Virus record (IMG/VR): IMGVR_UViG_3300042326_002445
Span: 1-64,000 of that record
Direction: 5' to 3' (one strand)
Length of the DNA stretch: 64,000 nt
Both the position numbers and the translations under genes were made by a program. The stretch's first letter is position 1. Each line of letters begins with the position of its first letter. Below, one piece after another: positions 11,740 through 63,670 of the stretch. Below the pieces are notes generated by a model. That model ran no database searches and had not been told where the DNA came from. It saw only the letters and a program-made list of their open reading frames with translations.

Positions 11740-14700
11740 ATGCAAATTCCAAAATCACAATTTAGGGTAGACCGTCGTCCAATTGCTCGCATCATATGCG
11801 ATCCTATGTCCTTTGCAACTGTACCCTCTCTTGCATACACTCCATGTCCAGATTTGAATAGGGATGGCGTCGTGGACGACCTAGACTTGGCTATAGTGCA
11901 AGAGAATTGGGGAAATAACCCTGGTCATCCGGCAGATCTTGACCGTAATGGAGAAGTTGATGGGCTAGATGTGGGCATTGTAATTACCAATTTCGGACCT
12001 GCTAGATGTGTCCCTAATGTTGAAGATTTGTGCAACATAGTTAAAACAAGGGGATTGGGTCCTGCCTTCTATGGGCCTAATGGCTTTAAGAATTTCTTTA
12101 ATAATTATTTAAGCAGATTATATGACGCTGGTTTTAGAAGATTTTCTTTGCAATGCCCTTCTGGATGTCATCTTAATACAGAAACTCACAATTTATCCAG
12201 TAATATTAGAAATACATTTGATAATTTGCAATCTTATTATTTCACTACATTATTAGAAGAGTCTGGCGCTTGTTCTGAGGATTCTTTGCCATTTGACGTA
12301 AGCAATCTTCGCTTAGACGACAAAATATATGCAAGTTTTTATGATTCTTTTATTGGCCATTTATCTTATTGGACAAGAAGTCAACACGAGTTTGTTGAAG
12401 TGAATGTAGAGATGGGGTCTAAGGTCATATTTTCAAATAGTGAAGTAAATCTTGACGTTTTAAGTTTACCACAGGATGATTTTATAAATATAGAATCGGA
12501 TTTTAATATTAATTTACCTGCTCATAGAATATGGCTTGAATATAATTTAAATGAATTTTTTGCTAATGGTATTTCTGGAGTAGGTTTAAGTAATTGTAAA
12601 TTGTCTCTATTGCAAAATATATTAAACTTTAATAACATTAATGATGCTGTTTGGAAATTGTATGGTGCATATTTTATGCACGTTAACATACCTAATATAA
12701 ATGGAGAACTTTTAAACAGTAATGAGTATTCTAATTTTAGAATAATATCTAATTTTGATAATCCTTTTGGATTTACTAGTCAGAATATGACACGTCTTTT
12801 CGGTGGTTTAAGAATGTTTGATAAAGGAGCTGAAATACACAGTTCATTCAGTCTCAATGATATCTCATCTTATTCCCAGGAGGAACTAGATGAGATGGTG
12901 GATGATTGCGGGTTTATTCCTGGAATTCAAATCCCGTATTCTATTAATATAAATTCACTAAGTTTTGACAACATAGTTTCTCAATTCAATAAAATATCAG
13001 CATCGGTGGAATATGCAGAAAAGAAATCGAATGAAAGATTATTCGGTAAATCTCTTTTCTTTTTTAGTGAGTCTGCAGGGGAAGCAAAAGATTCAAATGG
13101 TGCAACCAGTGTAAGTAATTCTTATTTAAGATCTTCTGTAAAATTTGACGAGCGTATAGTGCCAGTAATTAAAGTAAACTGCTCTAAAAATTACAAAAAT
13201 ATTGATGAAAGCATATCTAGAACATATGTCCCATCCTGGTGGTTTTCTAATCGTCCAGAAAATTGCATTGACACATCTATGGTGGATGAAGTTGTAAGTA
13301 GTTGGACAATTCAAAATTCTGACGATATTTTAAAAGTAAATAACTCTAGTCCTTATGGAACTTATGGTCCAGAAAAATGTGCTGATGCAGCTTTTGATAT
13401 GATATTGCAATATCAGAGTTCATATAATGGAGTGGACAGGGCTAATATAGATTTTGAAAATCCTAATAACGTAGCCATTAAGCTAGAAAATTGGGGAGAT
13501 CTTTTTGACCATCAATGTACTCAGGAAAATTTAGATGAAACCTTATCTCAAGGCTGGTGTAGACTTTTTACTAATTCATTAGATCAGATTTTTAGCTATT
13601 TTGATGAAGACTTAGATGCAGAAAGAAAGCCGATTGACAGACTTAAAAATCTGTATGCCAAAAATGGTGTTTTTGAGTGTTCAGTGTGGACAAAAAGATT
13701 TATTGAAAGATTTAAATATAGGCAGCATAACAGGAGGGCATATGGGGGGCTCAGTATAGTTCCTAATCCTCGCATAGTATACATTGATGAACAATCCGTG
13801 TTAGCTCCACATGATTTTATAAATTATATAGGTGTAGAATCAGCAAGTGATTCTGAGTGTTTAGAAATTGGAAGCTATTTTGGTTCATGGCATCATCATT
13901 TCAGTGATGAAAGATTTAGGGATGTATCACAGGGTTTTGTTTGGAGAAATTATTTAACATTAAAAGACGCTTACGATTACGCATGTCAGTCTAGCGAATT
14001 TAGTGTAAATCGCATGTCTGAGAATTCAAACAATATTATTGGTCAAATTAGTGTTAAAGATTACAGTAGGCAGGATAAATCGTATGCATATTCAGTTCAA
14101 GACAATGCTGCTATGGAAAAATGGTTGCAAGTTTTAATTGACGAAGTTGCTAGTAGACGCATTTATGAAAGTTTGGGCATTCATGTAGAAAATGCTTTTA
14201 CAAATGGCAGGTATGCTCAAAGAGGTTTCGCTTGCGGTATTAATAACAATCTTTCTTATTGCAATGTACAGGCTCCATTTTATTATTTTGTTAATAGGTG
14301 GCATTATTACAATGGTAAGCATGATTTTAATTTACCAAAAACTTCTAGTTTTCATATTAATCATGTTTGCCCAACTTCAATCGCAATAGATGATGGAGTT
14401 AATAATGCCTTATTTGATTGGGAACCTAATTTTGATAATCGTAAAGTTAGGTTTGAAAGTCTAGAATATTTTAATAGTTATAGTAATAACAATCAAGTTG
14501 AAATGAATTTTGGATGGAGGCCTTCTTATGAAAACGCTCCTGATGGAAGAGGTACGTTCTCTTATGGTGCAGGACCTACTGGAGATCCAGAAAGCGATAT
14601 AGTATATGGAGACATACATAGATCAAATATACAGATGCTTTTACAAAAAAATCATACTAGGTATGCTCAATATTTATTAAATACTATATACGCACTCAAT

Positions 14701-17070
14701 TCTTCTTCTTCTTTTAAGGAAAAAACAAAAGTTATATTTACTCATGGCATAAACAATAATACCTCGCATGTTTCTTTGGCAGCAAACACATTATCTTTGG
14801 GAAATTTTCAAAATGGTACTATTACCAATGGTATTAGCAATATTTTTGATATAGATTTTCAAGATGGATATTCTTTCGATATCCGAGCATTTGTGTCTTC
14901 TTGGTATGATATTTTACAAAAAATTTCTAAAGAAAAATTATTTGATAATTTTATCTTTATACATAAACACAAAGAGCAGACTGTAGCCGATTGGCAAGAC
15001 TTTTCTTTAGGCATAGAGAATGCACTTAATTATGATGGAGGTGGGAGTTCAAGTAGTTCTTCATCTTCTAGCTCTTCTTTCATGAAGGGTGACTGGAATG
15101 GGGATGGAGTTATTGATGCCGTCGATCTTGGCGCATTGCTTGGATGCTGGGGTTCAAACTCATCTTCTGAATGTTTAAGAGTCTTTGACTTTGATGGAGA
15201 TGGAGCTGTTGGCGCAAATGATTTGGGTGCATTGCTTGGAATATGGACTGTCGTATCTTCATCTTCTAGCTCTTCTTTCATGAAGGGCGACTGGGACGAT
15301 AATGGAGTTATTGATGCCGTCGATCTTGGCGCATTGCTTGGATGCTGGGGTTCAAACCCGTCAGATAGATGCAGAAGATATTTTGACTTTGATGGAGATG
15401 GAGCTGTTGGCGCAAATGATTTGGGTGCATTGCTTGGAATGTGGACTGTCGTGCCTGGATCTTCTAGCTCTTCTTTCATGAAGGGCGACTGGGACGATAA
15501 TGGAGTTATTGATGCCGTCGATCTTGGCGCATTGCTTGGATGCTGGGGTCCAAATCCATCTCCTGAATGTTTAAGAGTCTTTGACTTTGATGGAGATGGA
15601 GTTGTTGGCGCAAATGATTTGGGTGCATTGCTTGGCAGCTGGTCAGTTTCTCCTATTTCCTCTAGCAGTTCTTCAAGCTCTTCAGTGGACGTATCCGCAT
15701 ATACTGGAGTTATGGCGGTAAGAATTAATGAAAATGGAATCAAAAATATCACCGGACTAGATTTAAACAACTTTTCATGGAAAATCTTAGTTGGTCAAAG
15801 AGGCGGAGAAAATTTCTTACAAGCAATTTTGCTTAATGATAATGGATCTTCTTCAAATATTCTTTTTGATATTTCTATTAAAAACAAATTTATTGGAGAT
15901 ATAGTTTCAGAAATAGATTCGATTCCTGGCTTTCATGCTGAAGTTTTGAATAATTCTGATCTGTCTTTGAGTGACGGACTTTATTTTGATCCACAAAAAG
16001 TTTATACAGAAGTTGATTTTGCTACAGGCTTATTGGCCAATCCATCTGTTAATTTTACTGGGTTTGACAATCCTTTTGTTATTATGTCTTTAGAGGGTAC
16101 TCTAAATGATCATTCTTTAATAGGATCTCAGGTTAAGCAAAATTTTGGTAGATATTGTTCTTTTAAGTCAGTTTGCCCACACGCAAGCTTAACCAGTATA
16201 ATTGGAGGTTCTTCTGGCTTCTTGTCGATTAATGATGCCCAGTCTGATATGCTGTCAAGTTTTGACCATGTTTCTGTGGACGGAGAAATTATAAAGATTG
16301 GAAATTGGAATAACAGTACAGCTGAAATACTTGAAAGAGGCGTTGGCAATACTCCTAGGAGATTCCACGCTAGTGGAGCAAACGTATTTGGGGTTGGAAA
16401 AAATGAAGTATTTGATAATAACTTTTATTTAGATGTAAATTCAAAATATATTTATCAATACAGATGTTTAAGTATTAGAAATATATATCCAAATATATCT
16501 ATTATTGATCCAAAAATTTTATTAGATAATAATTTTAAACCTGGTCTCGTGAAGCTTAGCTTTGCTGTTGAATTGCCAGCACACAAATATGTTGTTCTAA
16601 GTAGTTCGGTTGGCTCTGGAACTAGAAGTATAAATATTGAAACAGAAAATTTACAAAATTATGTTATAAATCGCAATATAAGTCAATACGTAGATTCTCT
16701 CATGAGATTTTCTATGGTTTCTGGAGACTCTTACTATCGCAAAATTTCTTCTATCAATCAAAGTTATATTGAACTCGATAATGATCTACCTATGCCAGCT
16801 AACCAATTTGAAAAAATAGAAATTATACCTGGTCCTGCATCTAATAGTTTTCAAGGTAAAATAGCTCCTGTAATATCAAATAGACTAACTCAGTTCTATG
16901 ATATTAACAATTTAGATGATTTATCAATACCGCAAGTTGATAATAATTTGACTAGGTCTATTTCTTATAATAATATAATATATTTATGGATAAAAAGAGA
17001 AATTCCCAAAGATGTAAGAATTAAGTTTACAAATACCTTGCCAATAAAATTTAAGTTTACAATTAAATGA
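11740..17070 (+). CDS. 1776-aa dockerin-like-repeat protein with possible TIM-barrel regions and a phage-structural-like C-terminus
   Basis: One N-terminal dockerin-like domain and three tandem dockerin-like domains with Ser linkers. C-terminal VDGEII...ERGVGNT...HASGANV and QYRCLSIRN...LWIKREIP resemble motifs of phage tail/structural proteins. Confidence 0.7.
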   Translation: MQIPKSQFRVDRRPIARIICDPMSFATVPSLAYTPCPDLNRDGVVDDLDLAIVQENWGNNPGHPADLDRNGEVDGLDVGIVITNFGPARCVPNVEDLCNIVKTRGLGPAFYGPNGFKNFFNNYLSRLYDAGFRRFSLQCPSGCHLNTETHNLSSNIRNTFDNLQSYYFTTLLEESGACSEDSLPFDVSNLRLDDKIYASFYDSFIGHLSYWTRSQHEFVEVNVEMGSKVIFSNSEVNLDVLSLPQDDFINIESDFNINLPAHRIWLEYNLNEFFANGISGVGLSNCKLSLLQNILNFNNINDAVWKLYGAYFMHVNIPNINGELLNSNEYSNFRIISNFDNPFGFTSQNMTRLFGGLRMFDKGAEIHSSFSLNDISSYSQEELDEMVDDCGFIPGIQIPYSININSLSFDNIVSQFNKISASVEYAEKKSNERLFGKSLFFFSESAGEAKDSNGATSVSNSYLRSSVKFDERIVPVIKVNCSKNYKNIDESISRTYVPSWWFSNRPENCIDTSMVDEVVSSWTIQNSDDILKVNNSSPYGTYGPEKCADAAFDMILQYQSSYNGVDRANIDFENPNNVAIKLENWGDLFDHQCTQENLDETLSQGWCRLFTNSLDQIFSYFDEDLDAERKPIDRLKNLYAKNGVFECSVWTKRFIERFKYRQHNRRAYGGLSIVPNPRIVYIDEQSVLAPHDFINYIGVESASDSECLEIGSYFGSWHHHFSDERFRDVSQGFVWRNYLTLKDAYDYACQSSEFSVNRMSENSNNIIGQISVKDYSRQDKSYAYSVQDNAAMEKWLQVLIDEVASRRIYESLGIHVENAFTNGRYAQRGFACGINNNLSYCNVQAPFYYFVNRWHYYNGKHDFNLPKTSSFHINHVCPTSIAIDDGVNNALFDWEPNFDNRKVRFESLEYFNSYSNNNQVEMNFGWRPSYENAPDGRGTFSYGAGPTGDPESDIVYGDIHRSNIQMLLQKNHTRYAQYLLNTIYALNSSSSFKEKTKVIFTHGINNNTSHVSLAANTLSLGNFQNGTITNGISNIFDIDFQDGYSFDIRAFVSSWYDILQKISKEKLFDNFIFIHKHKEQTVADWQDFSLGIENALNYDGGGSSSSSSSSSSSFMKGDWNGDGVIDAVDLGALLGCWGSNSSSECLRVFDFDGDGAVGANDLGALLGIWTVVSSSSSSSFMKGDWDDNGVIDAVDLGALLGCWGSNPSDRCRRYFDFDGDGAVGANDLGALLGMWTVVPGSSSSSFMKGDWDDNGVIDAVDLGALLGCWGPNPSPECLRVFDFDGDGVVGANDLGALLGSWSVSPISSSSSSSSSVDVSAYTGVMAVRINENGIKNITGLDLNNFSWKILVGQRGGENFLQAILLNDNGSSSNILFDISIKNKFIGDIVSEIDSIPGFHAEVLNNSDLSLSDGLYFDPQKVYTEVDFATGLLANPSVNFTGFDNPFVIMSLEGTLNDHSLIGSQVKQNFGRYCSFKSVCPHASLTSIIGGSSGFLSINDAQSDMLSSFDHVSVDGEIIKIGNWNNSTAEILERGVGNTPRRFHASGANVFGVGKNEVFDNNFYLDVNSKYIYQYRCLSIRNIYPNISIIDPKILLDNNFKPGLVKLSFAVELPAHKYVVLSSSVGSGTRSINIETENLQNYVINRNISQYVDSLMRFSMVSGDSYYRKISSINQSYIELDNDLPMPANQFEKIEIIPGPASNSFQGKIAPVISNRLTQFYDINNLDDLSIPQVDNNLTRSISYNNIIYLWIKREIPKDVRIKFTNTLPIKFKFTIK
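11845..12009 (+). other. Dockerin-like domain (two EF-hand-like Ca-binding loops)
   Basis: CPDLNRDGVVDDLDLAIVQENWG...ADLDRNGEVDGLDVGIVITNFG has two DxNxDGxVDxxD loops. Confidence 0.8.
15061..15645 (+). repeat. Three near-identical 198-nt tandem repeats, each encoding a Ser linker plus a dockerin-like domain
   Basis: tcttctagctcttctttcatgaaggg recurs at 15064, 15262 and 15460. Unit: FMKGDW..[DN]GVIDAVDLGALLGCWG....C...FDFDGDG.VGANDLGALLG.W. Confidence 0.95.
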
Positions 17071-45082: not shown

Positions 45083-46789
45083 ATGGGGTACACCGATCAC
45101 AGTTTTCATTTAGGTTTACGCAAGCTTGCTGGCATGAGGTCAGTAGCGCCTGCTGTTCGCTATATTGATTCAGATTTAGGCGAAGAAGCTTTTTGCGTCA
45201 GAAAAGATGAGCTTATTACTTTATGGGGTTGCGAATTAATGCCCTTGCAGTCTGATTGTGTAAAAATTAGCTATAAATCAAGCCCATCAGCATCGTGGCA
45301 AGTTTTAAAAAACTATTTAGTTCAAACTTCTATAGCTATTTCTGGCGGGCACAATCCTACAGATGCATCTTATACGTTTTCTGGCTTTCCAAGTTTAGCT
45401 GATAACTACGAATTAAATGATCCTTTATACGCAAATGGATTTCAAATAAGTGGAATTACTTACTGTAGAGAGCATGACAGCCCATTTAAAACTGTTGGAT
45501 ATTCTTTATCTTGGATATATAGAGTGCAAGACGACACTCACGCAAAAGTTTCGTATACTAATTTTGGAAGAGGGTTTAGGTTTTACGTAGAGGGTTATTA
45601 CAAATTTGAGTACGATGAGTCTAGATCGGCTTTGTACAGACAGACAAGTTCAAATTTTCCTATAGTAAACCCGGATACTCAAGACTACAATACATTTAAA
45701 TATAATGGATCTGTACCTTGGACCCCTTCTGATTCTTCTTTATACGAACATGGAGACTCATTAGTAAGATCTATAATTATTAAGTGTAAAAGTAATTTTG
45801 ATGTAGTTTCTAATAGCACTTATGTTAATAACAATGTGTCTATATCTTCTTCTAATATTGAGAGTTTTGTAGCCTTAACTGCTGATAATATTTGTAAAAA
45901 AGTAGGTCTTAATATTAAGTCAAAGTCATATTTATTACCATCTGCTAATGGATCAGTTTTGGCTAGACAGTATTGTGCTTCTGATAATTTTTTAATAGAT
46001 GTATCTTCTACGGGTGTTGCATCAAGTGTTATTAATCAATTTGACAAAGCCATGGGGGTGCAATCAGGAGAAGTGGTTAAAAATCTTAGAAATAGAACTT
46101 TTGATACAGCTAATTTTTTAGGACCAGGAGATTTTGTTCAACATATTGCTTCAACTCCCGGTTCTTTAGACTGTGCTCAAAAAATAGATATGAGGAATTC
46201 TAGATTTTATAATTGTATTTTTAAAAATGTTATATTTGGATCTCCAGGAAATTCACAATTAATTTTAGATGGTTCGTTATTTTTTCAATGTTCATTTTTT
46301 AACTGTAAATTTTACTTGAATGGACAAAATATTGCTATTAAAAATTGTAATGTTAATAATAGTTCAGTTCGTGATGGTTTTTTAATATTCAATGGATCTT
46401 ATGGAAATATGATTTCTGATGTTATATTCAAAGATACAGATAAGCCATTTGTATTTGTTAATGGAGTTAATGCAAATCGTAATAATTTTATTATGATGAA
46501 TAATTGCAGTCAGGCTGGAGACGTAGAAATAGGTAGTTGTCCTTTTGTAAATGTTGTAGGAGATTCAAATAACAGCGGATCTTTTTCTGGAAATATTGTT
46601 ATGAGAAATTATATAGACGACGGATCTGGAGATCCAATAAGAATTGAAAAAACTTCGGCTCATGGTAATTTTTTTGGTGGTAATTATATGATTTCTCATG
46701 GAAATGTATCTCTGGCAGACGACGCAAGGCAGAAGCAAAAAAATAAGGATATTATCAAATATCCGAGTATTAAGCCGTATATTCCTTAA
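45083..46789 (+). CDS. Tailspike-like beta-helix protein (568 aa), paralog 3
   Basis: LRKLAGMRSVAPAVRY, LWGCEL, EGYYKFEYDES and IDMRNSRFYNCIFKN are shared with the two upstream paralogs. Confidence 0.7.
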   Translation: MGYTDHSFHLGLRKLAGMRSVAPAVRYIDSDLGEEAFCVRKDELITLWGCELMPLQSDCVKISYKSSPSASWQVLKNYLVQTSIAISGGHNPTDASYTFSGFPSLADNYELNDPLYANGFQISGITYCREHDSPFKTVGYSLSWIYRVQDDTHAKVSYTNFGRGFRFYVEGYYKFEYDESRSALYRQTSSNFPIVNPDTQDYNTFKYNGSVPWTPSDSSLYEHGDSLVRSIIIKCKSNFDVVSNSTYVNNNVSISSSNIESFVALTADNICKKVGLNIKSKSYLLPSANGSVLARQYCASDNFLIDVSSTGVASSVINQFDKAMGVQSGEVVKNLRNRTFDTANFLGPGDFVQHIASTPGSLDCAQKIDMRNSRFYNCIFKNVIFGSPGNSQLILDGSLFFQCSFFNCKFYLNGQNIAIKNCNVNNSSVRDGFLIFNGSYGNMISDVIFKDTDKPFVFVNGVNANRNNFIMMNNCSQAGDVEIGSCPFVNVVGDSNNSGSFSGNIVMRNYIDDGSGDPIRIEKTSAHGNFFGGNYMISHGNVSLADDARQKQKNKDIIKYPSIKPYIP

Positions 46790-58800: not shown

Positions 58801-61800
58801 TGATGACTCAGAATTTAAAGAAAAGTTTCCATTCCCAGTTGCTTGTGGATCTATTTTAGGAAATTACTTATATAATGCTGCTGGCTTTACTGGAAGTTGC
58901 GATTCTTCTGCAAATATAAGTGTTGAAGACATTGCATTTAAAATCCCAACATTTGGCACCATATTCACTCAAGACATAAAAAATACCGTTATAGAATATC
59001 ATGCTTTTTGTCACAATTTAGCTAATACAAATATACTGTATTTGCAAAGTAAAATTAACGAATACTATGGATCTAGAGTAAAGGCCATAATTCCTCACGT
59101 TGAAAATGATATATTTTATAATTGGAAGTCTTGTTTAAGCGCTGAGATTTCAAATTACTCTAGTATTGTTAGTACAAATTCAGGAATTGAAAAACAAGCT
59201 CGTTCAAGGAGAATCCAAAATCCCAGCGCAGCTAGTAATACAGTAGATATACAAAGACCTGGCGCTGCGACCGTAGAAAATTTTGGACTTGACTTACTTT
59301 CATCTGCAGATGGTAAGAAAATTATTGTCAAGAAAATTCCAAATATACTTAGATACAGAGACACTGATTTTAGTAGCTTGTGGAATGAATTTGACAATGT
59401 TAATTCTACTAATATAGTAGAAGATGGCATCGTGAGAGAGGATGGCATTAAGGGCCATTTGGCTTCCTGTGTATTTGACTACATGCGCGCCGGTCATATT
59501 GTTATGTTAGATATGCCAAGCTGGAGTACATATAAGGATGATGGAGATACTTTATCAAATTCTTATATAAATAGCGACCCTCCCAGAAATGATATGCCAT
59601 TTATATTAAATGTCATAGATCTCAATAATCAGTTGAAGCAAAACGTATCTAGTTTATATAGACAAAACAAGCATGCTTGGATTGGTATACATTATGCAAA
59701 CAGAGCAAGAAAGTATATTCATGTATCAGATGCAGTCTCTTCAAATGGTCAAGAGTTTTACAGTGACATTAATCTTGACCTTTCTCGCTATGGCTATTCT
59801 GGAAATATGACAATAGGAGAATTTGCGTGGCCAATAATAGGAGCATACGAAACTTGCATATACAGTGGAATTTCTTCTGCAGTTATTAATGATTCTAGTT
59901 TAGAAAATGGTGATTTTTCTAGTCTAAAATTAATAATTATTCCGCATAGAAAACTTCTTAATAGTTTGCAAAAAGATAAGCTCAATCAATTTGAGGGTTC
60001 TGTAATTTATTTAGAAGATTTGTTGAGTCAAACAGGAAATCGCTGGTATAGTACGGCAAGCGATTTATCTGAATCCACGCCCGATTACGTTACTTTATAT
60101 AATTTGCTTTCTTTGCGGATCAAGAACTTAGTTGGCAGTTCTCCAATAAAAGTAAAATTAAATGTTGACAATTCTATAGTGACTGATTCTGGTAAGTACT
60201 TTTTGAAACCATCAAGTGTTTTTGACGCAGGCTTAAATAGCGATGTGCATAGAATCGTCGTGTGTGTTTCTAATGATAGAAATTGGGCTGATGTTAGAAA
60301 TAATACAAATGAAAATGGCATTTTTGGATTGACATCAAGAAACAATGATTTGTTAAATACTCAATCTGCTAATCAAATTTTCTCTAGTATTTATAGTAAT
60401 GACTCATTCTATGCAGATGGCTCTTATCCAGTTTTGGGTCAGTTTGCATATTATGCAGGAGATCCTCCAGCTGGATTTGGCAAAAGTTTCTCTGTATTTA
60501 TAACTTTCAACAATTATATATCTTTGGTGTCTGCTAAACAGATATCTTTAAATTTTGCTGATAATACTGTAGATAGTAAAGTTGTTTCTTGGTCTAACGG
60601 CTCAAGCGGTCAGTCAATATCTTCTAATTTTATATCTGATTTTTCTTGGTTTGAAATAGAATTTAAGTACGAAACGCCGCCTTCTAGTTCAAGCAGCAGT
60701 AGTTCAAGCAGTAGCAGTAGTTCAAGCAGCAGTAGTTCAAGCAGCAGTAGTTCAAGCAGCAGTAGTTCTAGCAGCAGTAGTTCAAGTTCTGGGTGTGTTG
60801 TTTGGACTGGTCCTGGCTGCCCGGACATGGATGGTGACGGGTTTGTTGGTGGTGCAGACCTTGGAGTATATTTCAGTGCTTTTACAGATTATAACCCGAT
60901 TGCTGACTTAAATGGAGATGGCGTTGTTAACGGAGCGGATCTTGGTATTCTTCAATCATATTGGGGTTCGTGCGTCGAATGTCCTAATTGGAACGGTAGC
61001 AGTAGTTCAAGCAGTAGTTCAAGCAGTAGTTCAAGCAGTAGTTCAAGCAGCAGTAGTTCAAGCAGCAGTAGTTCAAGCAGTAGTAGTTCAAGCAGTAGTT
61101 CAAGCAGTAGTTCAAGTTCTGGGTGCATTGTGTGGAATGGTCCTGGCTGCCCGGATGCAAATCAGGATGGAGTAGTAAATCAGTTTGATTTCGACATATT
61201 CTTGGCTTCTCAAGAAGAGTATAATCCTATTGCAGATCTTAACGGTGATGGTTTCGTAAATGGTAATGACATAGGTGTTTTACTTTCTTTTTGGGATAAT
61301 TGTGTTATATGCCCTAATTGGCCTCCTAGTTCTTCTAGTTCTTCTTCTAGTTCTTCTTCTAGTTCTTCTAGTTCTTCTTCTAGTTCTTCTTCTAGTTCTT
61401 CTTCTAGTTCTTCTTCTAGTTCTTCTTCTAGTTCTTCTTCTAGTTCTATTAATTTGTTTGGGGTTTTAAATACAAGGTCTGCTGTTGGGCCAAATCAGCC
61501 TTCATGGTGGTCTACTGCAAATGTGCATTTTCAATCCTTTAATCCATATGCAACGATCAAGCAGATTTATGAAGGCAATATGGAGGAATCTGCTTCGGCT
61601 TTAATTGAGCCATCATTATTGCTAGCATACGACAATCCATCTTCTGGTTGTTCCGTAAGGCCATATTATAGTTCAAGTCCAAACGGATATCCGCCTGGTT
61701 ATGAATTTGTTTATAGGTCAGAATATAATTGGATTCGAGTTGAAGGAAGTAATTTTAAGGAAAGATTTAATAATGGGCTTAATCGATGGTTTAATCCTGA

Positions 61801-63670
61801 GCAACGAGCGATAGTAGCTCACAGATATAGGCCAGATATTGTTATGATAGATTTGCATAATGGAGATGAGCCATTTATATATAAGTCTGCGGTTCCTCAA
61901 GCTCAGAGTTCTTTAATGATATCTGAAGAATATGGCTTGCCCGAGTATGACATGGTAAGGCCTTTTATAAGAAAGTCTCATGAGTTAGGAATGAAATGTA
62001 CAGCTTATTTTAAACCTCATTTTGCTTTCTTGAAAGAAGATATATTCCCGCCAGCATTAACTGCTAATGGCCAAAAAATTAGAGTAGAAATCAATCTCAC
62101 TCAATCGTGTAGCGTGCAAAGAAGTATATTCAATACTAACTTTAAGAATTTTTTGAAGAATTGCATGATAGAAATAGTAACTCCAGAATCTGGTGGTGGA
62201 TTAAATTGCGATGGCATTTATTGGGATTCAAGTTTACTTGAGGAGTTTTTAGATTTTAGTAATGACGCAATAGATGTTTTTGCCAAATATTTAGGATACG
62301 AAGGTTTTGATGATCCTGATTATATTTCTTGGGCTAGTGTTAATTTTCCATTCCCAAAAACTTCAGGCTGGGAAGTTTCAACAGAAAATGGATATGTTGG
62401 AGGTGGCGATAGACCATCCTACAGGGATGCATATCCAGACAATACATTTGAAGGTCTTGGTTATTGGAATCTTGTGAACAATATCAATGATTTAGATGCA
62501 AATGAAATTGCAAATTTAAAATCATATGTTAGTATAATTAAAAATAAGTACCACGAAATACTTAGAGAGATATCTGACGCTGTTTCTGTCGCCAGTAATG
62601 GGAATGCAGTATTTTTCCCAGGCGAGCTTCCATCTTGGCCAGACCAGCCACATGGTGCTGTTTCCGTAGAAATAGCCAGACATACTCATGCTGTAAAAAC
62701 TGAATTTGCAGTAGAGCCAAGAGGCTATAGTGGACTTAGAAAGAAATCAGAGCTCACTGATTCTGTTCTTAATAATGAAAGATTGTATTGCGACATACAA
62801 AGGCCGTCAATGTATCTCTCTATGACTTTGAACCAGAAACTTGATTTTGCCTCTGGAAATAAAACTGCTATTCAGTGGAATCCTCAAAGGGTTTGGATAT
62901 CTGATTTGCCTTTAGGCACATCTGGAGCAGCAAATACTTTGACAACTTTTAATAGTGATAGATTTTATCTATATCCAACTGGCTATCCGCTATTTTTTGA
63001 AAGAGGATTGGGAAGAGAAGATAGCATTCATGGATATTTAAGAGCAGTATATCAAATTATGATTAAAAATGGTAATATCTTTGATTTTAATACATGGTAC
63101 GGGACTGGATGGACTGGAGATCAAGATGAATTTATACAAGACGCAACTTTGATTAATAATGACGGTTATTATAATAATCCTAATAAGGGAGTATCTCCTG
63201 GAAATACTTATTCATTTTGGCGTAAAGCACTTTATCATGCAAGAAAAATGAAAGAAGAAATTATTAAAGAAGGACTAATATTAAGCATAAGGGAAGCTTA
63301 TTCTTGGGCTGCAATACATGTTTCAACCGCTGGCAGAATAGGGATCAACGCTCCAGTTGCTTGGGGCTCAGGCTATGTGACTGGATCTAATAAGCTTATA
63401 AACTTAACAAATAACACAAATTCTTTAGGACAAAATTGGGGAGAATTCTGGTGGCCCATACTCGGCGCGATGCAATCTTTTGAAAATAAGATGATTCCTT
63501 ACAGCTTAGTTCTTGACGATCAGCTTAAAAATGGGGAATTAAATGGGATTAAGGTAATAGTAGTACCTCATCGTGAATGGCTTTCTCTTGCTCAAGAATT
63601 GCGTCTTGTAGAATTTGTAAGCAGAGGTGGAAAAGTGGTTTATATGGATGAAATATTTAATGTAACTTGA
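46880..63670 (+). CDS. Giant (5596 aa) multi-enzyme protein: trypsin-like protease, beta-helix, three GHL6/GH42-like modules, SGNH esterase, GH56-like barrels, two dockerin-like domains
   Basis: 16.8 kb uninterrupted ORF with TAHY/FDY/GDSG, VYVDAVNGDDSNNGS...PFK, GESNS...HWD, three copies of WPI.GA, DLNGDGVVNGADLG and poly-Ser spacers. No signal peptide. Confidence 0.8.
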   Translation: MAYIINYKPNLHDLYTYGSQPIIDPSNWQNNRRVYPTGYNQNLFIKDPFYNLNFNVDFSGMDREGRGAPGYGFNQYEGQSGYLPSGVLVNSGSGSVTLPSIAGQFRSFGNNADCYHLGCPVGNFEIASNYNHWNNGAWAKVLISPKHFLATAHYVGSGNNNTSIRLLGKNNQVVTRNATKLIDFSNSSNFPPGYNWPNSSFDYTLFELDTALTEQEMQQIKVYKFLNAFNLPTSVPLFYVSPQSVVSVLNSLGNDYFNINLYPDAAYRGSLVSGVPTQSTFSVWVGDSGTPVFAYVPGIDETCFLYSAWGGMTISDNGNTANPTATKKWFDALKQYIFDRIGYNIGLVNYSTTGGGNSSSSSSIGSSSSSSSSSSSNVDSGLWMPISSDNPFARNIDMTSDTDSPPIARWSSVPLQWIHDGESVKASVVAYHSTGIKRVDFICDGGEYESGAHIIGVINPVADSSSKQDEYACSIDINDSWSEGIHTIRAIVYANNGTKRVLQGSWLPKYSSISDPYNYFNNGEVDFTFIVNRGSYDGNTVYVDAVNGDDSNNGSFNSPFKNLWNAIPAAHAFHLENSIKEDVIICKAGEYRLSPLLNGDYSSGTPSALALGAGRIGWLKIKALDGLSKKDVVITNRSTNFGSVANPTSYAVKSNTLVSRFTVFENITLENFYDSSTNVSGEKDYIISTDGSYGFDSRGVWLNNCSIRGRSGVSVDTLVSTLNNQVNIFFKAYPGIAQNVVGFATNCNVNSLYRGFDGFVMLKQCGIGNTVEFAIKNCASIFSCNISNVGNVGAVADSAVINFSHTSLAKSNIIVAKNQINKSAISHFRINPHRNVFDSEIYFEGFAIVSNYFSRATGGPGKSYIYNGIKQIFMSHNSMLDYLSIHDASGGVWGGDVLVSDVYCKSNLLNGIIVDSTSGSSASLGAGSVALNQGFLNSNSEISSNIFLLPTQSNNPLFLSLIVNDKNKQVNQSVHKIVKNYSEGNLSLLCVSLNGVSNPAKGIETATLLNTDILGNSYEGSKSDCGARQDCTEEVSPDIIEVADFQTVPISGFPVLGSNQVEFFQSSTFALQYQFSAFDMVLWYDQNVRNFPVSASEVGSEYYPGGSYETCQICTLGSGLCTSTVDGGINWFKRWSLPSSLTYELSTLPACGSGNTSKIAGTRAAFKEYFDVDGMIRGMSRYSPDWALVFLHGGSEPLWWDTQIPGMQQWALLADDGEESTSMGLGLDVVQAYKDASNKYKQKLMAYFFPFAWIELDSSVYPYALDIFGNHVIEGRHGPNISYRSCFNSAFVELLAKIHVEMAQKCYDLETGYGFNGCMWDAAPLFYTLDFSPDAISASGIDSTTNFPWPLNNPADGSDTTALTDFVSSVTANANPGTLLLRDPNPSFGWTQAVKDKLQAYVYALNNKQPDIVRTIREAVDQAGYSEFAILHAVGNSQPSFEWPGNSEDVVLYASGVKTEIGAEGYVRRRQAPGVTNKTGAKSVPDLWLAMHTDLLLSQARTGKRAYGWQIGQWFIPNWISGGTCDDTFKSCLTSFDSGYSGKVEFKNNVLPRDIAVRGWLENQSLLALVSHTTPEFMYAFYDWYKYDQIEDLSGFENSADAFAIQHLPFMRRISSILGSIGDANVRLFNRTNVAWCVILHRPEVGWGSYAFINTGINESYANFSYYWPIFGAVQTCVEHGIPYVIAQDDAFTVNNFTNSGVVIVPFDKNLLPISARQELDSFNGHVIYLQDEIANGQVDDNFHNTELVGNKTRGQVARDQLWTLIQQGSRNIVLQTEFSYPDSLPEKPVPIAGYEIGLDSYGNESLLVTLIADAAWHDARKFGFFGLTTNNYPINGTCGRQNLLLASPNDPENDLVSSLGLRKILDVCSCTYSDTFTTINTLAGRDCYYVEHAAAGAIPVDVLPARGKLNYYAGYPPVWNSNRGARITFNASQSPYRLRQLLLDKESGIFGPVDMFVNGDMIDVVPFEIGSVVQVQMKNEQIIPHVGICVNQDSLKISNNNEFANLLNDLQSQPTSFNVIKIRLVCGNSLVESEVVANTIFSELESHARSNPDAYDWLRNCIGEIGYPTSHTLLGFLESTEVNPCGNGDFSIGGIVIQNEGICTIASNLPSLSSLYQEVNANSACECESSSTYKIYASKAKIDRSLNPDDGSSWASFVENEISSVSDISNGLMLFIKPVSDNSSIYYNIDSNGMPIIDGVVKYISDINDAIFNYTLGEKDITDYYAGVVIDFNHLFNINDNQSSLHAYACSYPFTINSQGSDSYDNVRRAIAYVNGNLIALINAIKFINQNISVSIRGLGRINDSDFEESMTSKTPYSAINCTPNARKELSKRVSEFYGPLLEACDFIYLWNGNESAEPDLSSALDSVSASKLRLSCLVKHFEYRQADCPSIFVEINGVHLSSDGLGQNDYCKVSNAEIIKESIDPFTNKNIDGFVYYSEQENIEKLIFENCPISISNPEVYGAVNSCWDLSIDGCSDQSTLIDVFETSIYNNISFINSYINNTSSNLYVPLIIMIGESNSGGLARNSQALPEELGIRPEVKILNNYTLNFENLNISSSGNNILDHRGPNGIPDVTDSVWNSNGGSPHGWELGLANAVRDKMFSRDVAYLIKAGHGGSKIGDDSIPGDWDTSGIYWNLFLQRYSAAISELNVDGYSPQTYIWYEIGINDCISNVNVDQWKNKLVQKINNIRSVTGVNSPVFITLLPDVAKTGDLTDSISDFNNAILEICVDQQLVYWVKSDDAHLRFNDIYHWDYYGMKLISSRMSKLSANTIGEGGNYVVSLDNPPLQPDYSDYRPIVAAVPYNEEPDPVLEFVYPVFTVRGRLSGGPTLDEPGTGPTPSHIGNPSDAIGFFNARGIPAVKRFVFYFNIGSSTFDGVFADPIYNQTYDKLYNPADSCINVNGEIVKQDTLDPREGSNPTFRGNLPFISPWTLGANTRLEQFTRQWVAEYKNLNGKIYGFISDNESLNPTGFWAESSLRYDNNNTSRIPHFTKIINDPRASLTDSSAGYASEINQTLVQQLRLNDFYNINDFDVVDTKTVDDPQFRGGYLHWDYVMYRHAIWYAQKHWYDVISEYFPGHNSTHVWTFYVPKEDHFNDMNGHITYRDMLCGDTANPLLFAEAGGISVNSEIDPNNKTRTRFLSQYNPGGTPFGSRAWNALLLQQQEIKAIRRHGENQKFIPWIGSRNLTLNNAFGGKNDVNHNSLWAEGVYHLALHNPNAIYMFYPRNSDGAGDTAWYPENGLVSYQLLNSILKEVNQRTGNKIISLVESSVQRIDLDSKVLITGCKTIKNKHLWRITADVINVNEVIIDGNVFAVDSNSPAIWYETEINVGSIDILSYNAATKSIILISSVAEGPLCKQCLTYRVAPAFTADEISVDSSSLPQNVSKMIQISDKYLTRNSYDEADSCGAGVFRINACQRYAFYENDNLRYNYNGAINYINEVVLKNSDVNLIDYTGYIGAEFSKIKQLFVEYLSNASGLAVMGDSLQSGISQMFENIQAIKNSSPKAKVGLLNCPVVPFIAPNITWSSASDSVKFNYIDKCASIIEDVISESDFICLDLRQEISVKNTEEYAEYLAYIRSVSKGFNDWLASKNLVKTIFGIVSKESYVDFNALPGYQYRQSVAITADYVHGFIDSSDVILRWLELFDSDSSNDNGALSAISNVIGFEISGADSTSYNAIAAYGLNNLAELKSEISRNCRSYNSTNDNVNTIGFRPSRGPDYPEWLSNSSLAMKFNLTAEDIKSCAALAVPHMPASSSVPVDDVIVCSFINTQYISTSSLYDIQTSLPCSTTRNINTARSSFLNGLKIQDFVDYAQSYSPDILVFNAHQYDEPLWYATDTAIGQWNILTNDPRYGLGFGVDILLSYSVAANFINARCIVEINPCSFVTLPAAKYPYSLNCFGGIIKENFDGGINISIRSFLNQDYVDLTFDYHNEIFDKGIDGIMWSREVVSKFGDFSTNVIEKFARYLGYENIDDSEFKEKFPFPVACGSILGNYLYNAAGFTGSCDSSANISVEDIAFKIPTFGTIFTQDIKNTVIEYHAFCHNLANTNILYLQSKINEYYGSRVKAIIPHVENDIFYNWKSCLSAEISNYSSIVSTNSGIEKQARSRRIQNPSAASNTVDIQRPGAATVENFGLDLLSSADGKKIIVKKIPNILRYRDTDFSSLWNEFDNVNSTNIVEDGIVREDGIKGHLASCVFDYMRAGHIVMLDMPSWSTYKDDGDTLSNSYINSDPPRNDMPFILNVIDLNNQLKQNVSSLYRQNKHAWIGIHYANRARKYIHVSDAVSSNGQEFYSDINLDLSRYGYSGNMTIGEFAWPIIGAYETCIYSGISSAVINDSSLENGDFSSLKLIIIPHRKLLNSLQKDKLNQFEGSVIYLEDLLSQTGNRWYSTASDLSESTPDYVTLYNLLSLRIKNLVGSSPIKVKLNVDNSIVTDSGKYFLKPSSVFDAGLNSDVHRIVVCVSNDRNWADVRNNTNENGIFGLTSRNNDLLNTQSANQIFSSIYSNDSFYADGSYPVLGQFAYYAGDPPAGFGKSFSVFITFNNYISLVSAKQISLNFADNTVDSKVVSWSNGSSGQSISSNFISDFSWFEIEFKYETPPSSSSSSSSSSSSSSSSSSSSSSSSSSSSSSSSSSSSGCVVWTGPGCPDMDGDGFVGGADLGVYFSAFTDYNPIADLNGDGVVNGADLGILQSYWGSCVECPNWNGSSSSSSSSSSSSSSSSSSSSSSSSSSSSSSSSSSSSSSSSSGCIVWNGPGCPDANQDGVVNQFDFDIFLASQEEYNPIADLNGDGFVNGNDIGVLLSFWDNCVICPNWPPSSSSSSSSSSSSSSSSSSSSSSSSSSSSSSSSSSSSSSSSINLFGVLNTRSAVGPNQPSWWSTANVHFQSFNPYATIKQIYEGNMEESASALIEPSLLLAYDNPSSGCSVRPYYSSSPNGYPPGYEFVYRSEYNWIRVEGSNFKERFNNGLNRWFNPEQRAIVAHRYRPDIVMIDLHNGDEPFIYKSAVPQAQSSLMISEEYGLPEYDMVRPFIRKSHELGMKCTAYFKPHFAFLKEDIFPPALTANGQKIRVEINLTQSCSVQRSIFNTNFKNFLKNCMIEIVTPESGGGLNCDGIYWDSSLLEEFLDFSNDAIDVFAKYLGYEGFDDPDYISWASVNFPFPKTSGWEVSTENGYVGGGDRPSYRDAYPDNTFEGLGYWNLVNNINDLDANEIANLKSYVSIIKNKYHEILREISDAVSVASNGNAVFFPGELPSWPDQPHGAVSVEIARHTHAVKTEFAVEPRGYSGLRKKSELTDSVLNNERLYCDIQRPSMYLSMTLNQKLDFASGNKTAIQWNPQRVWISDLPLGTSGAANTLTTFNSDRFYLYPTGYPLFFERGLGREDSIHGYLRAVYQIMIKNGNIFDFNTWYGTGWTGDQDEFIQDATLINNDGYYNNPNKGVSPGNTYSFWRKALYHARKMKEEIIKEGLILSIREAYSWAAIHVSTAGRIGINAPVAWGSGYVTGSNKLINLTNNTNSLGQNWGEFWWPILGAMQSFENKMIPYSLVLDDQLKNGELNGIKVIVVPHREWLSLAQELRLVEFVSRGGKVVYMDEIFNVT
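47270..47930 (+). other. Trypsin-like (clan PA) serine protease domain
   Basis: VLISPKHFLATAHYV (His at 47336), FDYTLFELD (Asp at 47483) and VGDSGTP (Ser at 47741) give an intact triad in the canonical order. Confidence 0.8.
48497..49970 (+). other. DUF1565-like motif followed by a pectin-lyase-like right-handed beta-helix
   Basis: TVYVDAVNGDDSNNGSFNSPFKNLWNAI...IICKAGEY, Asn-ladder repeats, and a closing DILGN...DCGARQ. Confidence 0.7.
54410..55190 (+). other. SGNH hydrolase, sialate O-acetylesterase (SASA)/CE6-like domain
   Basis: Block I IIMIGESNSGG, block II YLIKAGHGGS, block III WYEIGIND, block V DIYHW. Confidence 0.8.
60683..61447 (+). repeat. Poly-Ser tracts (36, 41 and 40 residues) flanking two Cys-bracketed dockerin-like domains
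   Basis: Ser tracts at 60683-60790, 60998-61120 and 61328-61447. Dockerin-like units at 60794-60991 and 61124-61321 (C.VW.GPGCPD...YNPIADLNGDG.VNG.D.G.L.S.W..CV.CPNW). Confidence 0.95.

What the first reader, a model, noticed from the sequence alone, without database searches (positions are those of the whole stretch)
11740..63670. Candidate cellulosome-like ('virosome') apparatus: dockerin-bearing giant proteins and hydrolases in a phage-like structural operon
Seen: six dockerin-like double Ca-loop domains (four in 11740..17070, two in 46880..63670). Five sit on Ser linkers. They occur in proteins with hydrolase-type modules, co-oriented with FN3/LamG/propeller/beta-helix genes, and none of these proteins has a signal peptide. 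Known: dockerins with Ser/Thr linkers assemble secreted enzymes on cohesin scaffolds. Inference: either the virion assembles a modular glycan/protein-degrading complex through dockerin contacts (the repeated beta-sandwiches in 371..10231 and 18139..26565 are candidate partners), or the dockerins mimic host surface proteins and bind the host's own anchoring receptor. I know of no described phage system of this kind.
Basis: partly seen in the sequence, partly recalled or inferred. Interest (0 to 1): 0.9.

Follow-up and report, generated by a model that had tools for sequence, protein, structure and literature searches.

The report
Dockerin-studded giant fibre proteins, huge phage
An uncultivated huge phage (at least about 324 kb) encodes giant, apparently virion-surface proteins that carry genuine dockerin calcium-binding modules on poly-serine linkers next to sugar-cleaving enzyme domains, but no cohesin partner was found, so a cellulosome-like assembly is unproven.

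Summary
Gene 11740-17070 has four Pfam Dockerin_1 modules and gene 46880-63670 has two. Five of the six sit between poly-Ser linkers, and none of the proteins has a signal peptide or membrane helix.

The window is the first 64 kb of a 223.6-kb IMG/VR viral contig. Overlapping contigs extend it to at least about 324 kb. The surrounding genes are phage-like, but I found no capsid, portal or terminase gene in the roughly 257 kb I could read.

Two more giant proteins of the same genome add three dockerins, giving nine in four proteins. Orthologues of the first protein at 34-44% identity keep the dockerins and the gene order.

The 5596-aa protein also has an intact SGNH esterase motif set and three paralogous modules with a glycosidase-like TIM-barrel fold.

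No cohesin was detected in any giant protein, and the proposed repeated beta-sandwiches are not supported.

My best reading is end-to-end fibre or adhesin proteins whose dockerins act as calcium-dependent sticky beads, with the partner unknown. No such phage system is described in the papers or the 50,697 GenBank phage records I searched.

The parts
1..369 (+). 3' end of a GT1-family glycosyltransferase gene (383 aa in full). The window starts at contig position 1.
   Evidence: L001 8848-9999, Glycos_transf_1/Glyco_trans_1_4; window coordinates equal contig coordinates
371..10231 (+). g1, giant protein of 3286 aa with an RCC1-type beta-propeller at aa 1811-2038 (nt 5801-6484). Conserved upstream of the dockerin protein in relatives.
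   Evidence: RCC1_2 58.8 bits; BLIP-II-like PDB hits; synteny; one internal repeat pair only
10231..11736 (+). g2, 501-aa protein of unknown function. It is a conserved neighbour of g3 (44-61% identity in relatives).
11740..17070 (+). g3, 1776-aa dockerin protein: conserved N-terminal motif, dockerin 1, about 1000 aa of unknown fold, three tandem dockerins, and a 460-aa C-terminal domain.
11845..12009 (+). g3 dockerin 1 (aa 36-90), not on a Ser linker and flanked by Cys (PCPD ... C). Its calcium-ligand positions are invariant in the four orthologue or variant sequences aligned with g3.
   Evidence: (invariant D38 N40 D42 G43 D49 D66 G71 D77)
15046..15684 (+). g3 array (aa 1103-1315): polySer-dockerin 2-polySer-dockerin 3-polySer-dockerin 4-polySer. 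It is a 198-nt tandem repeat of 2.9 copies with 89% matches.
   Evidence: copy number differs in the near-identical variant P0044
17067..18137 (+). g4, 356-aa protein with a weak LamG/ConA-like match. Its start overlaps the g3 stop and it is conserved in relatives (38-51%). It is an untested candidate partner.
   Evidence: (Laminin_G_3, E=0.033)
18139..26565 (+). g5, giant protein of 2808 aa with only a weak BNR_4 hit. No cohesin and no internal repeats were detected.
26565..32114 (+). g6, 1849-aa protein. Its N-terminus resembles that of the upstream 1221-aa protein. It has a weak match to the phage central tail fibre J family.
   Evidence: (phrog_31, E=5.6e-8)
32114..35285 (+). g7, g8 and g9 (212, 541 and 303 aa): small translationally coupled proteins of unknown function.
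35293..39030 (+). g10, 1245-aa protein with no family match.
39030..46789 (+). g11, g12 and g13 (1228, 783 and 568 aa): paralogues that share an N-terminal domain of about 90 aa and internal segments but differ in their C-terminal parts. g11 has a LamG domain at aa 1053-1216 (nt 42186-42677).
   Evidence: g13 is fused to a g14-like protein in relative P0003
46880..63670 (+). g14, 5596-aa multi-module protein: three GH-like modules, an SGNH esterase and two dockerins on long poly-Ser linkers.
50291..52399 (+). g14 GH-like module A (aa 1138-1840).
54419..55177 (+). g14 SGNH/SASA-like esterase (aa 2514-2766) with the four SGNH blocks present: GESN, G, GIND and DIYH.
   Evidence: SASA 22.8 bits, just under the 24.8 cut-off; motifs read from the sequence
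58205..60364 (+). g14 GH-like module B (aa 3776-4495).
60683..61447 (+). g14 linker-dockerin cassette (aa 4602-4856): polySer(36)-dockerin-polySer(41)-dockerin-polySer(40). Each dockerin is bracketed by four Cys (GC.VW.GPGCPD ... C..CPNW).
61814..63661 (+). g14 GH-like module C (aa 4979-5594): a TIM barrel plus an alpha/beta domain in the AlphaFold2 model.
63735..64000 (+). Start of the next giant gene (2587 aa; contig 63735-71498). It has a pectate-lyase-like domain, an RCC1 propeller and one Cys-bracketed dockerin.

Best explanation
The window is part of a fibre or adhesin gene block of an uncultivated huge phage. About 111 kb of this genome encodes 15 proteins of 1200 aa or more.

I take these proteins to be virion-borne and released by lysis, which would explain the lack of signal peptides. 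They probably join end to end into long appendages that bind and trim host surface glycans. The glycan-acting and glycan-binding parts are an SGNH esterase, three GH-like TIM-barrel modules, a pectate-lyase-like domain, LamG lectin folds and beta-propellers.

The nine dockerins in four proteins are true dockerin-type paired calcium loops, each followed by a helix. They hang on flexible poly-Ser linkers. Most likely they act as calcium-dependent sticky beads that give multivalent attachment to a protein partner. My preferred partner is a component of the host cell surface. The second choice is another fibre protein, such as the conserved neighbours g2 or g4. A classical cohesin scaffoldin is unlikely, because the genome parts I examined encode none.

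Shown: dockerin identity, linkers, enzyme motifs and fold, conservation and synteny in relatives, gene fusions, and the phage-like gene content.

Inferred: virion location, calcium dependence, the binding partner, glycan substrates, and possible O-glycosylation of the linkers by the phage's many glycosyltransferases.
For: Dockerins
- All four proteins pass the Pfam gathering score for Dockerin_1.
- Loop geometry and the alignment of all nine modules fit dockerins.

Conservation
- g3 orthologues at 34-44% identity, from eight sequences or contigs, keep the N-terminal dockerin and two or three internal ones.
- They also keep the gene order giant-510 aa-g3-357 aa-giant.
- The calcium-ligand residues are invariant.

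Favouring avidity or adhesion over a single assembly joint
- The internal g3 units have identical helix residues.
- Copy number varies: three units here, two in the near-identical variant P0044 (98-99% over the two aligned blocks) and in P0047 and P0049.
- Relatives P0001-P0005 have g14-like modules but no dockerin loops.
- Dockerin 1 of g14 is nearly identical to one in a gene about 85 kb away.

Fibre nature
- g11, g12 and g13 share an N-terminal anchor-like domain.
- P0003 fuses g13 with g14 aa 1050-2470. P0001 and P0004 fuse the g14 C-module with the N-terminus of the next gene. This fits consecutive gene products that join physically.
- Pect-lyase_RHGA_epim scores 45.5 bits in the next gene.
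- The SGNH motifs are intact.
- The GH-like fold matches GH151, GH167, GH35, GH42, GH164 and Cwp19, best E=1e-7. Remote sequence hits are GHL6 proteins.

Phage context
- The contig is IMG/VR UViG_3300042326_002445.
- It carries DnaB, DnaG, a split PolIII alpha, RecA, clamp and clamp loader, IF3, HNH endonucleases, phrog_1297 (279 bits), phrog_1314 (270 bits), phrog_8420 (198 bits), phrog_284 (153 bits) and Phage_L5_gp82.

Other
- No signal peptide or membrane helix was found.
- No cohesin was found.
- A cellular analogue exists: the dockerin-type giant proteins of Omnitrophota, proposed to attach to and process prey cell surfaces (bioRxiv 10.1101/2023.11.21.568195).
Against: - No capsid, portal, terminase, sheath or baseplate gene was recognised in the roughly 257 kb surveyed. 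About 77 kb of the genome was out of reach.
- Virion location is inferred only. The PHROG tail hits are weak.
- The GH-like model has low confidence (pLDDT 57.8, TM-scores 0.3-0.38), and its catalytic residues are not assigned.
- The 1000-aa core of g3 could not be modelled (pLDDT 32) and is unrelated to the g14 modules.
- No binding partner of any kind was identified, and the host is unknown.
- Conservation of the g3 dockerins in position across the family would fit an assembly role as well as an adhesion role.
- Many non-cellulosomal dockerins have no known partner, so they may bind nothing.
Confidence: 0.45

Rival explanations
1. Virion 'cellulosome'. The dockerins plug enzyme-bearing giant proteins onto cohesin-like beta-sandwich domains of other virion proteins and so assemble a modular glycan-degrading complex on the particle.
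For: - Dockerins sit on enzyme-bearing proteins.
- The g3 dockerins and their neighbours g2 and g4 are conserved together.
- g4 has a weak match to a LamG-like jelly roll and is translationally coupled to g3.
- Identical dockerins on two different giant proteins could target one common socket.
Against: - No Cohesin match was found in any giant or small protein of the block, even at E<=10 for g1, g2, g4, g5 and g7-g10.
- g1 and g5 show no scaffoldin-like arrays of repeated domains.
- Tandem identical dockerins, and their loss in relatives, are not what a fixed assembly joint predicts.
Confidence: 0.2
2. Structural beads only. The dockerin-like modules bind calcium to stiffen, space or stabilise the long Ser-linked fibres outside the cell, and they have no protein partner. 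The Cys brackets add disulfide locks.
For: - The modules lie inside the proteins, between linkers, rather than at the ends.
- Four conserved Cys bracket the g14-type modules, and two Cys sit in the g3-type linker.
- No partner was found.
- From general knowledge: in many non-cellulosomal genomes dockerins far outnumber cohesins.
Against: - Helix surfaces are strongly conserved within the g3 array, and one dockerin is shared nearly unchanged between two genes. This suggests selection on a binding surface.
- The dockerin fold is best known as an interaction module.
Confidence: 0.25
3. Not a phage. The contig is a cellular genome fragment or a giant non-viral extrachromosomal element, and the proteins are exported surface adhesins of a cell.
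For: - No capsid, portal or terminase was seen in about 257 kb.
- The replication genes are of the bacterial type.
- The only cellular match to the Cys-bracketed dockerin is an Omnitrophota giant protein. Omnitrophota have dockerin-type giant proteins.
Against: - No Pfam hit to a ribosomal protein, aminoacyl-tRNA synthetase or central-metabolism enzyme appears in the gene tables along about 257 kb.
- Most small genes are orphans.
- There are strong PHROG hits and HNH endonucleases.
- PolIII alpha is split and IF3 is present; from general knowledge both occur in huge phages.
- Many fragments are listed in IMG/VR.
- The proteins have no signal peptides or membrane anchors, unlike cellular dockerin proteins.
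Confidence: 0.08

Closest known systems
Type I dockerin modules of cellulosomal enzymes (Pfam PF00404)
   Same: They share the paired 12-residue calcium loops, each followed by a helix. The internal two-fold sequence symmetry is the same. Both are attached to carbohydrate-active modules through Ser-rich linkers. The window modules pass the Pfam gathering score.
   Different: Here there is no cohesin or scaffoldin and no signal peptide. The dockerins are internal and in tandem arrays of two or three. The loop spacing is short (27-32 residues), and conserved Cys brackets enclose most modules. The carrier is a phage.
Non-cellulosomal dockerin-like modules, including the dockerin-type giant proteins of Omnitrophota (bioRxiv 10.1101/2023.11.21.568195)
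   Same: Both are giant multi-domain proteins with repeated dockerins and glycan-binding or glycan-processing domains. The Omnitrophota proteins are proposed to attach to and process another cell's surface. The only cellular hit to the Cys-bracketed dockerin is an Omnitrophota protein.
   Different: The Omnitrophota proteins are 30,000 aa or more. They carry thrombospondin type 3 repeats, C-terminal membrane anchors and SecA-like domains, and lie next to secretion loci. None of that is seen here. Identity is only 33%.
Phage tail fibres and tailspikes with depolymerase or esterase domains, for example the T4 long tail fibre built from consecutive gene products and SGNH-esterase tailspikes (comparison from general knowledge)
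   Same: Consecutive co-oriented genes appear to encode products that join, as shown by fusions in relatives. Paralogues share an N-terminal anchor and differ in their distal parts. Pectate-lyase-like and SGNH esterase domains are present.
   Different: The scale is far larger: up to 5596 aa per protein, and 15 proteins of at least 1200 aa. Dockerins, long poly-Ser linkers and GH42-like TIM-barrel modules are present. There is no detectable similarity to any of 50,697 GenBank phage records.
Clostridium perfringens glycosidase complexes held together by dockerin-cohesin-type pairs (comparison from general knowledge)
   Same: Dockerin-type modules are used outside cellulose degradation, to link enzymes that act on cell-surface or mucosal glycans.
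   Different: Those are secreted bacterial enzymes with identified cohesin-type partners. No partner is found here.
Passing annotations of 'dockerin' in phage genomes: Vibrio phage VvAW1 gene 40 (PMC3558961) and a 406-kb brine-pool jumbo phage (bioRxiv 10.1101/2024.01.25.577265)
   Same: A dockerin-like match was reported in a phage genome.
   Different: Each is a single-line mention with no analysis of architecture, conservation, partner or function. Whether those phages are related to this one is unknown.

Membership tests
Dockerin type I module (PF00404) | Score above the Pfam gathering threshold of 22.9 bits | tested here: met
   g3 87.1 bits in four stretches. g14 28.8 bits, and 39.3 bits for the cassette alone. 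Next gene 24.5 bits and the 2671-aa protein 36.1 bits.
Dockerin type I module (PF00404) | Two tandem segments, each with a 12-residue EF-hand-like calcium loop (D-x-D/N-x-D/N-G ... D) followed by a helix | tested here: met
   All nine modules have two loops 27-34 residues apart (27-32 for the six in the window) with the ligand positions kept. They are invariant in the g3 orthologues. Helices are inferred from the sequence pattern only.
Dockerin type I module (PF00404) | Calcium-dependent folding and binding to a cohesin | not testable with these tools
   This needs recombinant protein (ITC, CD, pull-down) or multimer modelling.
Cellulosome-like complex | Scaffoldin with one or more cohesin modules encoded by the same genome | tested here: not met
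   No Cohesin hit in any of the 15 giant proteins or the small window proteins. None appears in the precomputed Pfam lists of about 257 kb. About 77 kb of the genome and the host were not examined.
Cellulosome-like complex | Dockerins borne by catalytic subunits | tested here: inconclusive
   g14 has intact SGNH motifs and three GH-like modules. The next gene has a pectate-lyase-like domain. The g3 core is of unknown fold. No activity was shown.
Cellulosome-like complex | Secretion of components through signal peptides | tested here: not met
   No signal-like N-terminus was found. Release by lysis would replace secretion if this is a phage.
Tailed-phage tail fibre or tailspike proteins | Shared N-terminal attachment domain with variable distal receptor-binding or enzymatic part | tested here: met
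   g11, g12 and g13 share an N-terminal domain. In P0003 the g13-type N-terminal part carries a g14-type module.
Tailed-phage tail fibre or tailspike proteins | Sequence or profile similarity to known tail, baseplate or fibre families | tested here: inconclusive
   Only weak hits were found: phrog_31 at E=5.6e-8 over 105 residues and phrog_13857 at E=1e-4. PF12708 scores 45.5 bits. There are no tblastn hits in GenBank phages.
Tailed-phage tail fibre or tailspike proteins | Presence in the virion | not testable with these tools
   This needs virion proteomics or cryo-EM.
Huge (jumbo) tailed phage | Major capsid protein, portal and large terminase | tested here: inconclusive
   None was seen from 10 kb upstream of the window to about 247 kb.
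Huge (jumbo) tailed phage | Phage-type gene content and viral classification | tested here: met
   It is an IMG/VR UViG. It has strong PHROG hits and HNH endonucleases, and a replication module with split PolIII alpha and IF3. No Pfam hit to a ribosomal protein, aminoacyl-tRNA synthetase or central-metabolism enzyme appears in the gene tables.
Omnitrophota dockerin-type giant proteins | Length of 30,000 aa or more, thrombospondin type 3 repeats, C-terminal membrane anchor and SecA-like domain | tested here: not met
   The largest protein here is 5596 aa. There is no membrane helix and no TSP3 or SecA hit.

The most novel reading that the evidence does not exclude
A family of huge phages builds a glycosylated, enzyme-laden fibre coat. 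In it, dockerin modules provide specific calcium-dependent docking. They either hijack cohesin-type anchoring proteins on the host surface as the adsorption receptor, or they plug enzyme fibres into non-canonical sockets on the virion. Either case would be the first viral use of the dockerin system.
Probability: 0.22. Interest if true: 0.85.

Novelty: new variant of a known kind. Interest (0 to 1): 0.62.

Why it matters
Dockerins are the classic plug of bacterial multi-enzyme machines. Finding them conserved in the giant surface proteins of a phage family would extend that system to viruses.

It would also give a concrete handle on two open questions. The first is what orphan, non-cellulosomal dockerins bind. 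The second is why some huge phages spend about a third of their genome on giant proteins.

The short, Cys-locked dockerins on poly-Ser linkers could also serve as compact, disulfide-stabilised docking tags if a partner is found.

The genome carries at least 17 glycosyltransferase genes. Together with the poly-Ser linkers, this raises the testable idea of virus-directed glycosylation of virion fibres, as is known for giant viruses of amoebae and for some mycobacteriophages (general knowledge).

Tried and rejected
- Walking the genome for capsid, terminase, portal and sheath genes. I used all 12 exact-protein look-ups and all 8 viral scans. These covered 10 kb upstream of the window to about 247 kb and found no hallmark gene. 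The first metagenome scan, for the upstream gene, found nothing. The genome-collection scan with RecA gave one uninformative hit.
- AlphaFold2 of g3 aa 1-1100 with five sequences gave pLDDT 32 and was unusable, so I ran no fold search on it.
- Profile-profile comparison of the g3 core with the g14 GH-like module showed no relation.
- PDB sequence searches of g1, g3, g5, g6 and g14 found only EF-hand or dockerin and RCC1 hits.
- The BFVD viral fold library has no significant match to the GH-like module.
- Cohesin search by Pfam at permissive E-values found nothing.
- The search for repeated beta-sandwich arrays in g1 and g5 was essentially negative. The first script for it timed out.
- Host inference failed. 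The PolIII alpha, MoxR ATPase and PurA/PurZ-like proteins have only distant phage relatives, at most 42% identity. The Cys-bracketed dockerin has one weak Omnitrophota hit.
- The ARAGORN tRNA-Val at 10364-10447 lies inside g2 and has no Rfam support, so I rejected it as probably spurious.
- I considered and rejected a eukaryotic giant virus. The replication genes are of the bacterial type, and the genes are operon-like with overlapping stops and starts.
Full report
WHAT THE WINDOW IS

The 64-kb window holds 14 ORFs, all on the + strand, running almost without gaps from 371 to 63670. Twelve of the 13 junctions overlap or are separated by 11 nt or less. GC content is 31-37% throughout, and GC skew is positive throughout.

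The window equals positions 1-64000 of IMG/VR contig IMGVR_UViG_3300042326_002445, which is 223,646 bp long. Near-identical contigs occur in many JGI, ENA, Logan and NCBI assemblies.

One JGI contig reaches about 16 kb upstream of the window. ENA contig k141_1443393 (210,909 bp) reaches the equivalent of about 324 kb. The genome is therefore at least about 324 kb.

IS IT A PHAGE?

I walked the genome with exact-protein look-ups and IMG/VR scans, from 10 kb upstream of the window to about 247 kb.

- Upstream lie more giant genes (1558, 1302 and 1221 aa) and a glycosyltransferase.
- Downstream of the window come giant genes of 2587 and 3965 aa and three glycosyltransferases.
- Next is a replication block with a DEAD helicase, IF3, DnaB, DnaG, PolIII alpha split into 445 and 650 aa, RecA, Toprim, UvrD, a clamp and a clamp loader.
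- Three more giant genes follow, of 1936, about 3946 and 2671 aa.
- Then come nucleotide-metabolism genes and a glycan-biosynthesis island of about 36 kb.
- Last are many small orphan genes, HNH endonucleases and proteins with strong PHROG matches: phrog_1297 at 279 bits, phrog_1314 at 270, phrog_8420 at 198 and phrog_284 at 153, plus Phage_L5_gp82.

No Pfam hit to a ribosomal protein, aminoacyl-tRNA synthetase or central-metabolism enzyme appears in the gene tables. This is the gene content of a huge phage.

The closest GenBank phages are very distant. PolIII alpha is 35% identical at best and the MoxR ATPase 42%. I put about 0.9 on 'phage'.

THE OBSERVATION

The six dockerins are real.

- Pfam Dockerin_1 gives 87.1 bits in four stretches for g3 (11740-17070) and 28.8-39.3 bits for g14 (46880-63670).
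- Each module has two 12-residue calcium loops 27-32 residues apart, each followed by a conserved hydrophobic helix pattern.
- g3 has one dockerin at aa 36-90 and three tandem ones at aa 1114-1306, separated by Ser runs. At the DNA level the three form a 198-nt repeat with 89% matches.
- g14 carries polySer(36)-dockerin-polySer(41)-dockerin-polySer(40) at aa 4602-4856.

None of the giant proteins has a signal-peptide-like N-terminus or a membrane helix by hydropathy. Cellular dockerin proteins found as distant hits do have signal-like N-termini.

WHAT I ADDED

(1) The same genome has two more dockerin proteins outside the window. The 2587-aa gene that starts at 63735 has one dockerin, and a 2671-aa gene at contig 144.9-152.9 kb has two. 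That makes nine dockerins in four proteins.

(2) There are two subtypes. The g3 repeats have two Cys in the segment between the two loops. The g14-type modules are enclosed by four conserved Cys (GC.VW.GPGCPD ... C..CPNW), which suggests disulfide locks for life outside the cell (the disulfides are inferred).

(3) g3 belongs to a conserved family.
- Proteins P0045, P0047 and P0049, and four metagenome loci (L064-L067), are 34-44% identical over the full length.
- All keep the N-terminal dockerin and two or three internal ones with Ser-rich linkers. They also keep the gene order giant-510 aa-g3-357 aa-giant.
- The calcium ligands of the N-terminal dockerin are invariant.
- A near-identical variant (P0044, 98-99% over the two aligned blocks) has one dockerin unit fewer.

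(4) The g14-type dockerins are lineage-specific. Relatives with homologous g14 modules (P0001-P0005) have no dockerin loops. Yet dockerin 1 of g14 is nearly identical to dockerin 1 of the 2671-aa protein encoded about 85 kb away.

ENZYME MODULES

g14 aa 2514-2766 matches the SASA/SGNH esterase family just below the cut-off (22.8 against 24.8 bits). It has all four SGNH blocks: GESN, G, GIND and DIYH.

g14 also contains three paralogous modules of about 700 aa, at aa 1138-1840, 3776-4495 and 4979-5594.

- A profile search of 1.84 billion proteins found 43 hits. The distant ones are GHL6 'hypothetical glycosyl hydrolase' proteins, matched through the C-terminal alpha/beta domain.
- An AlphaFold2 model of module C has pLDDT 57.8 and pTM 0.63.
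- Its best PDB matches are nearly all TIM-barrel glycoside hydrolases or related carbohydrate-active TIM-barrel enzymes, several of them with a GH42-like layout. They include a GH151 fucosidase (E=1e-7), GH167, Cwp19, GH35, GH42 and GH164. TM-scores are low, at 0.3-0.38.
- I call this a glycosidase-like fold of unresolved family.

The next gene has a pectate-lyase-like domain at 45.5 bits.

The 1000-aa core of g3 remains unknown. Its model was useless and it has no profile similarity to the g14 modules. So 'hydrolase-type modules' holds for g14 but not for g3.

FIBRE-LIKE BEHAVIOUR

g11, g12 and g13 share an N-terminal domain and diverge distally. g11 ends in a LamG domain.

In a relative, P0003, a g13-like N-terminal half (34% identical over 557 aa) is fused to a segment 45% identical to g14 aa 1050-2470. 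In P0001 and P0004 the g14 C-terminal module is fused to the N-terminus of the next gene, at 41-43% identity. Such fusions indicate that consecutive gene products work as one physical unit. From general knowledge, this is how multi-protein tail fibres are built.

Fifteen proteins of 1200 aa or more, about 37,000 aa or 111 kb of coding sequence, belong to this set.

THE PROPOSED PARTNERS

I found no Cohesin match in any giant protein or small window protein. Thresholds were E<=10 for g1, g2, g4, g5 and g7-g10, E<=1 for four further giant proteins, and E<=0.01 for the rest.

g1 and g5, proposed as scaffolds of repeated beta-sandwiches, do not behave like scaffoldins. Chunked profile-profile comparison with orthologue alignments showed one repeat pair in g1 (91.5% probability) and none in g5. 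A scaffoldin-like organisation is not supported.

g2 and g4, which flank g3, are better conserved than g3 itself. g4 has a weak match to a LamG-like jelly roll, and its start overlaps the g3 stop. They are the most sensible phage-encoded candidates to test.

MECHANISM

I commit to virion-borne, end-to-end fibres that bind and trim host surface glycans. On them the dockerins act as calcium-dependent multivalent attachment beads.

Several findings fit an avidity or host-interaction module better than a single fixed assembly joint:
- the units within an array are identical;
- copy number is variable;
- the g14-type dockerins are gained and lost between lineages;
- the same dockerin appears on two different fibres;
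- no cohesin is encoded.

I therefore prefer a host-surface partner. Assembly within the virion, and a purely structural calcium bead, are the live rivals. All of this is inference.

COMPARISON AND NOVELTY

The modules are members of the dockerin family by sequence. The system is not a cellulosome, because the scaffoldin, cohesin and secretion criteria are not met.

The nearest cellular analogue is the dockerin-type giant proteins of Omnitrophota, proposed to attach to prey surfaces. Those are far larger, membrane-anchored and rich in TSP3 repeats.

In phages I found only one-line mentions of dockerin matches. g3 and the g14 cassette have no tblastn match in 50,697 GenBank phage records.

I rate this a new variant of known kinds: dockerin modules and phage fibre or depolymerase proteins, combined in a way not yet described.

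Noticed in passing
Same genome, contig about 172-208 kb (L031 3200-20594, L032, L033, L034 1-5000) and L014 16808-20648: A very large glycan-biosynthesis repertoire. It includes at least 17 glycosyltransferase genes (GT1, GT2, GT10, GT11, GT25), a sulfotransferase, a DegT aminotransferase, a split transketolase, a TylF methyltransferase, six epimerase or dehydratase genes, NeuB, a CMP-sugar synthetase and two MptE-like genes. The poly-Ser linkers of the giant proteins are plausible O-glycosylation targets (inference).
   Followed up: partly
L033:17616-18626 (- strand); L023 6898-7446; L015 16296-17102: A short (336-aa) adenylosuccinate-synthase homologue is of the size of phage PurZ. It sits with a dCMP deaminase and a deoxynucleotide monophosphate kinase, so DNA base modification is possible. 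Its best phage hit is the 735-kb uncultured phage LR756501, at 39.8%. PurA versus PurZ was not resolved.
   Followed up: partly
P0003, P0001, P0004 against window 45083-63670 and contig 63735-71498: Gene boundaries are fluid in relatives. g13 is fused to a g14-like body, and the g14 C-terminal module is fused to the N-terminus of the next gene.
   Followed up: yes
window 15046-15684; 60683-61447; L008 and L010: There is length polymorphism between near-identical strains. g3 is 1776 aa here and 1710 aa in P0044, which has one dockerin unit fewer. g14 is 5596 or 5600 aa, and the next gene 2587 or 2590 aa. The repeat and poly-Ser tracts appear to expand and contract.
   Followed up: partly
window 60791-60997, 61121-61327; contig 63735-71498 and 144854-152896: Four conserved cysteines bracket each g14-type dockerin (GC.VW.GPGCPD ... 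C..CPNW). They may act as a covalent clasp holding the two ends of the module together. I know of no described dockerin subtype with this bracket, and I did not search for one systematically.
   Followed up: partly
L012 10849-11343, 15218-18500; L014 13510-13836; L034 15245-15436: The genome encodes translation initiation factor IF3, CsrA and SpoVS homologues, and a PolIII alpha split into two ORFs of 445 and 650 aa.
   Followed up: no
window 10364-10447: ARAGORN calls a tRNA-Val (cac) inside the coding sequence of g2. Rfam finds no RNA family anywhere in the window at gathering thresholds. The call is probably spurious.
   Followed up: yes
window 10231-11736 and 17067-18137: g2 and g4, which flank the dockerin protein g3, are better conserved across relatives than g3 itself (44-61% and 38-51%, against 34-44%). 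g4 has a weak match to a LamG-like jelly roll and is translationally coupled to g3.
   Followed up: partly
L044 11105-12358, 15773-16447, 17840-18772: A cluster of HNH and other endonuclease genes with strong PHROG matches lies among small orphan genes, typical of mobile homing elements in large phages.
   Followed up: no
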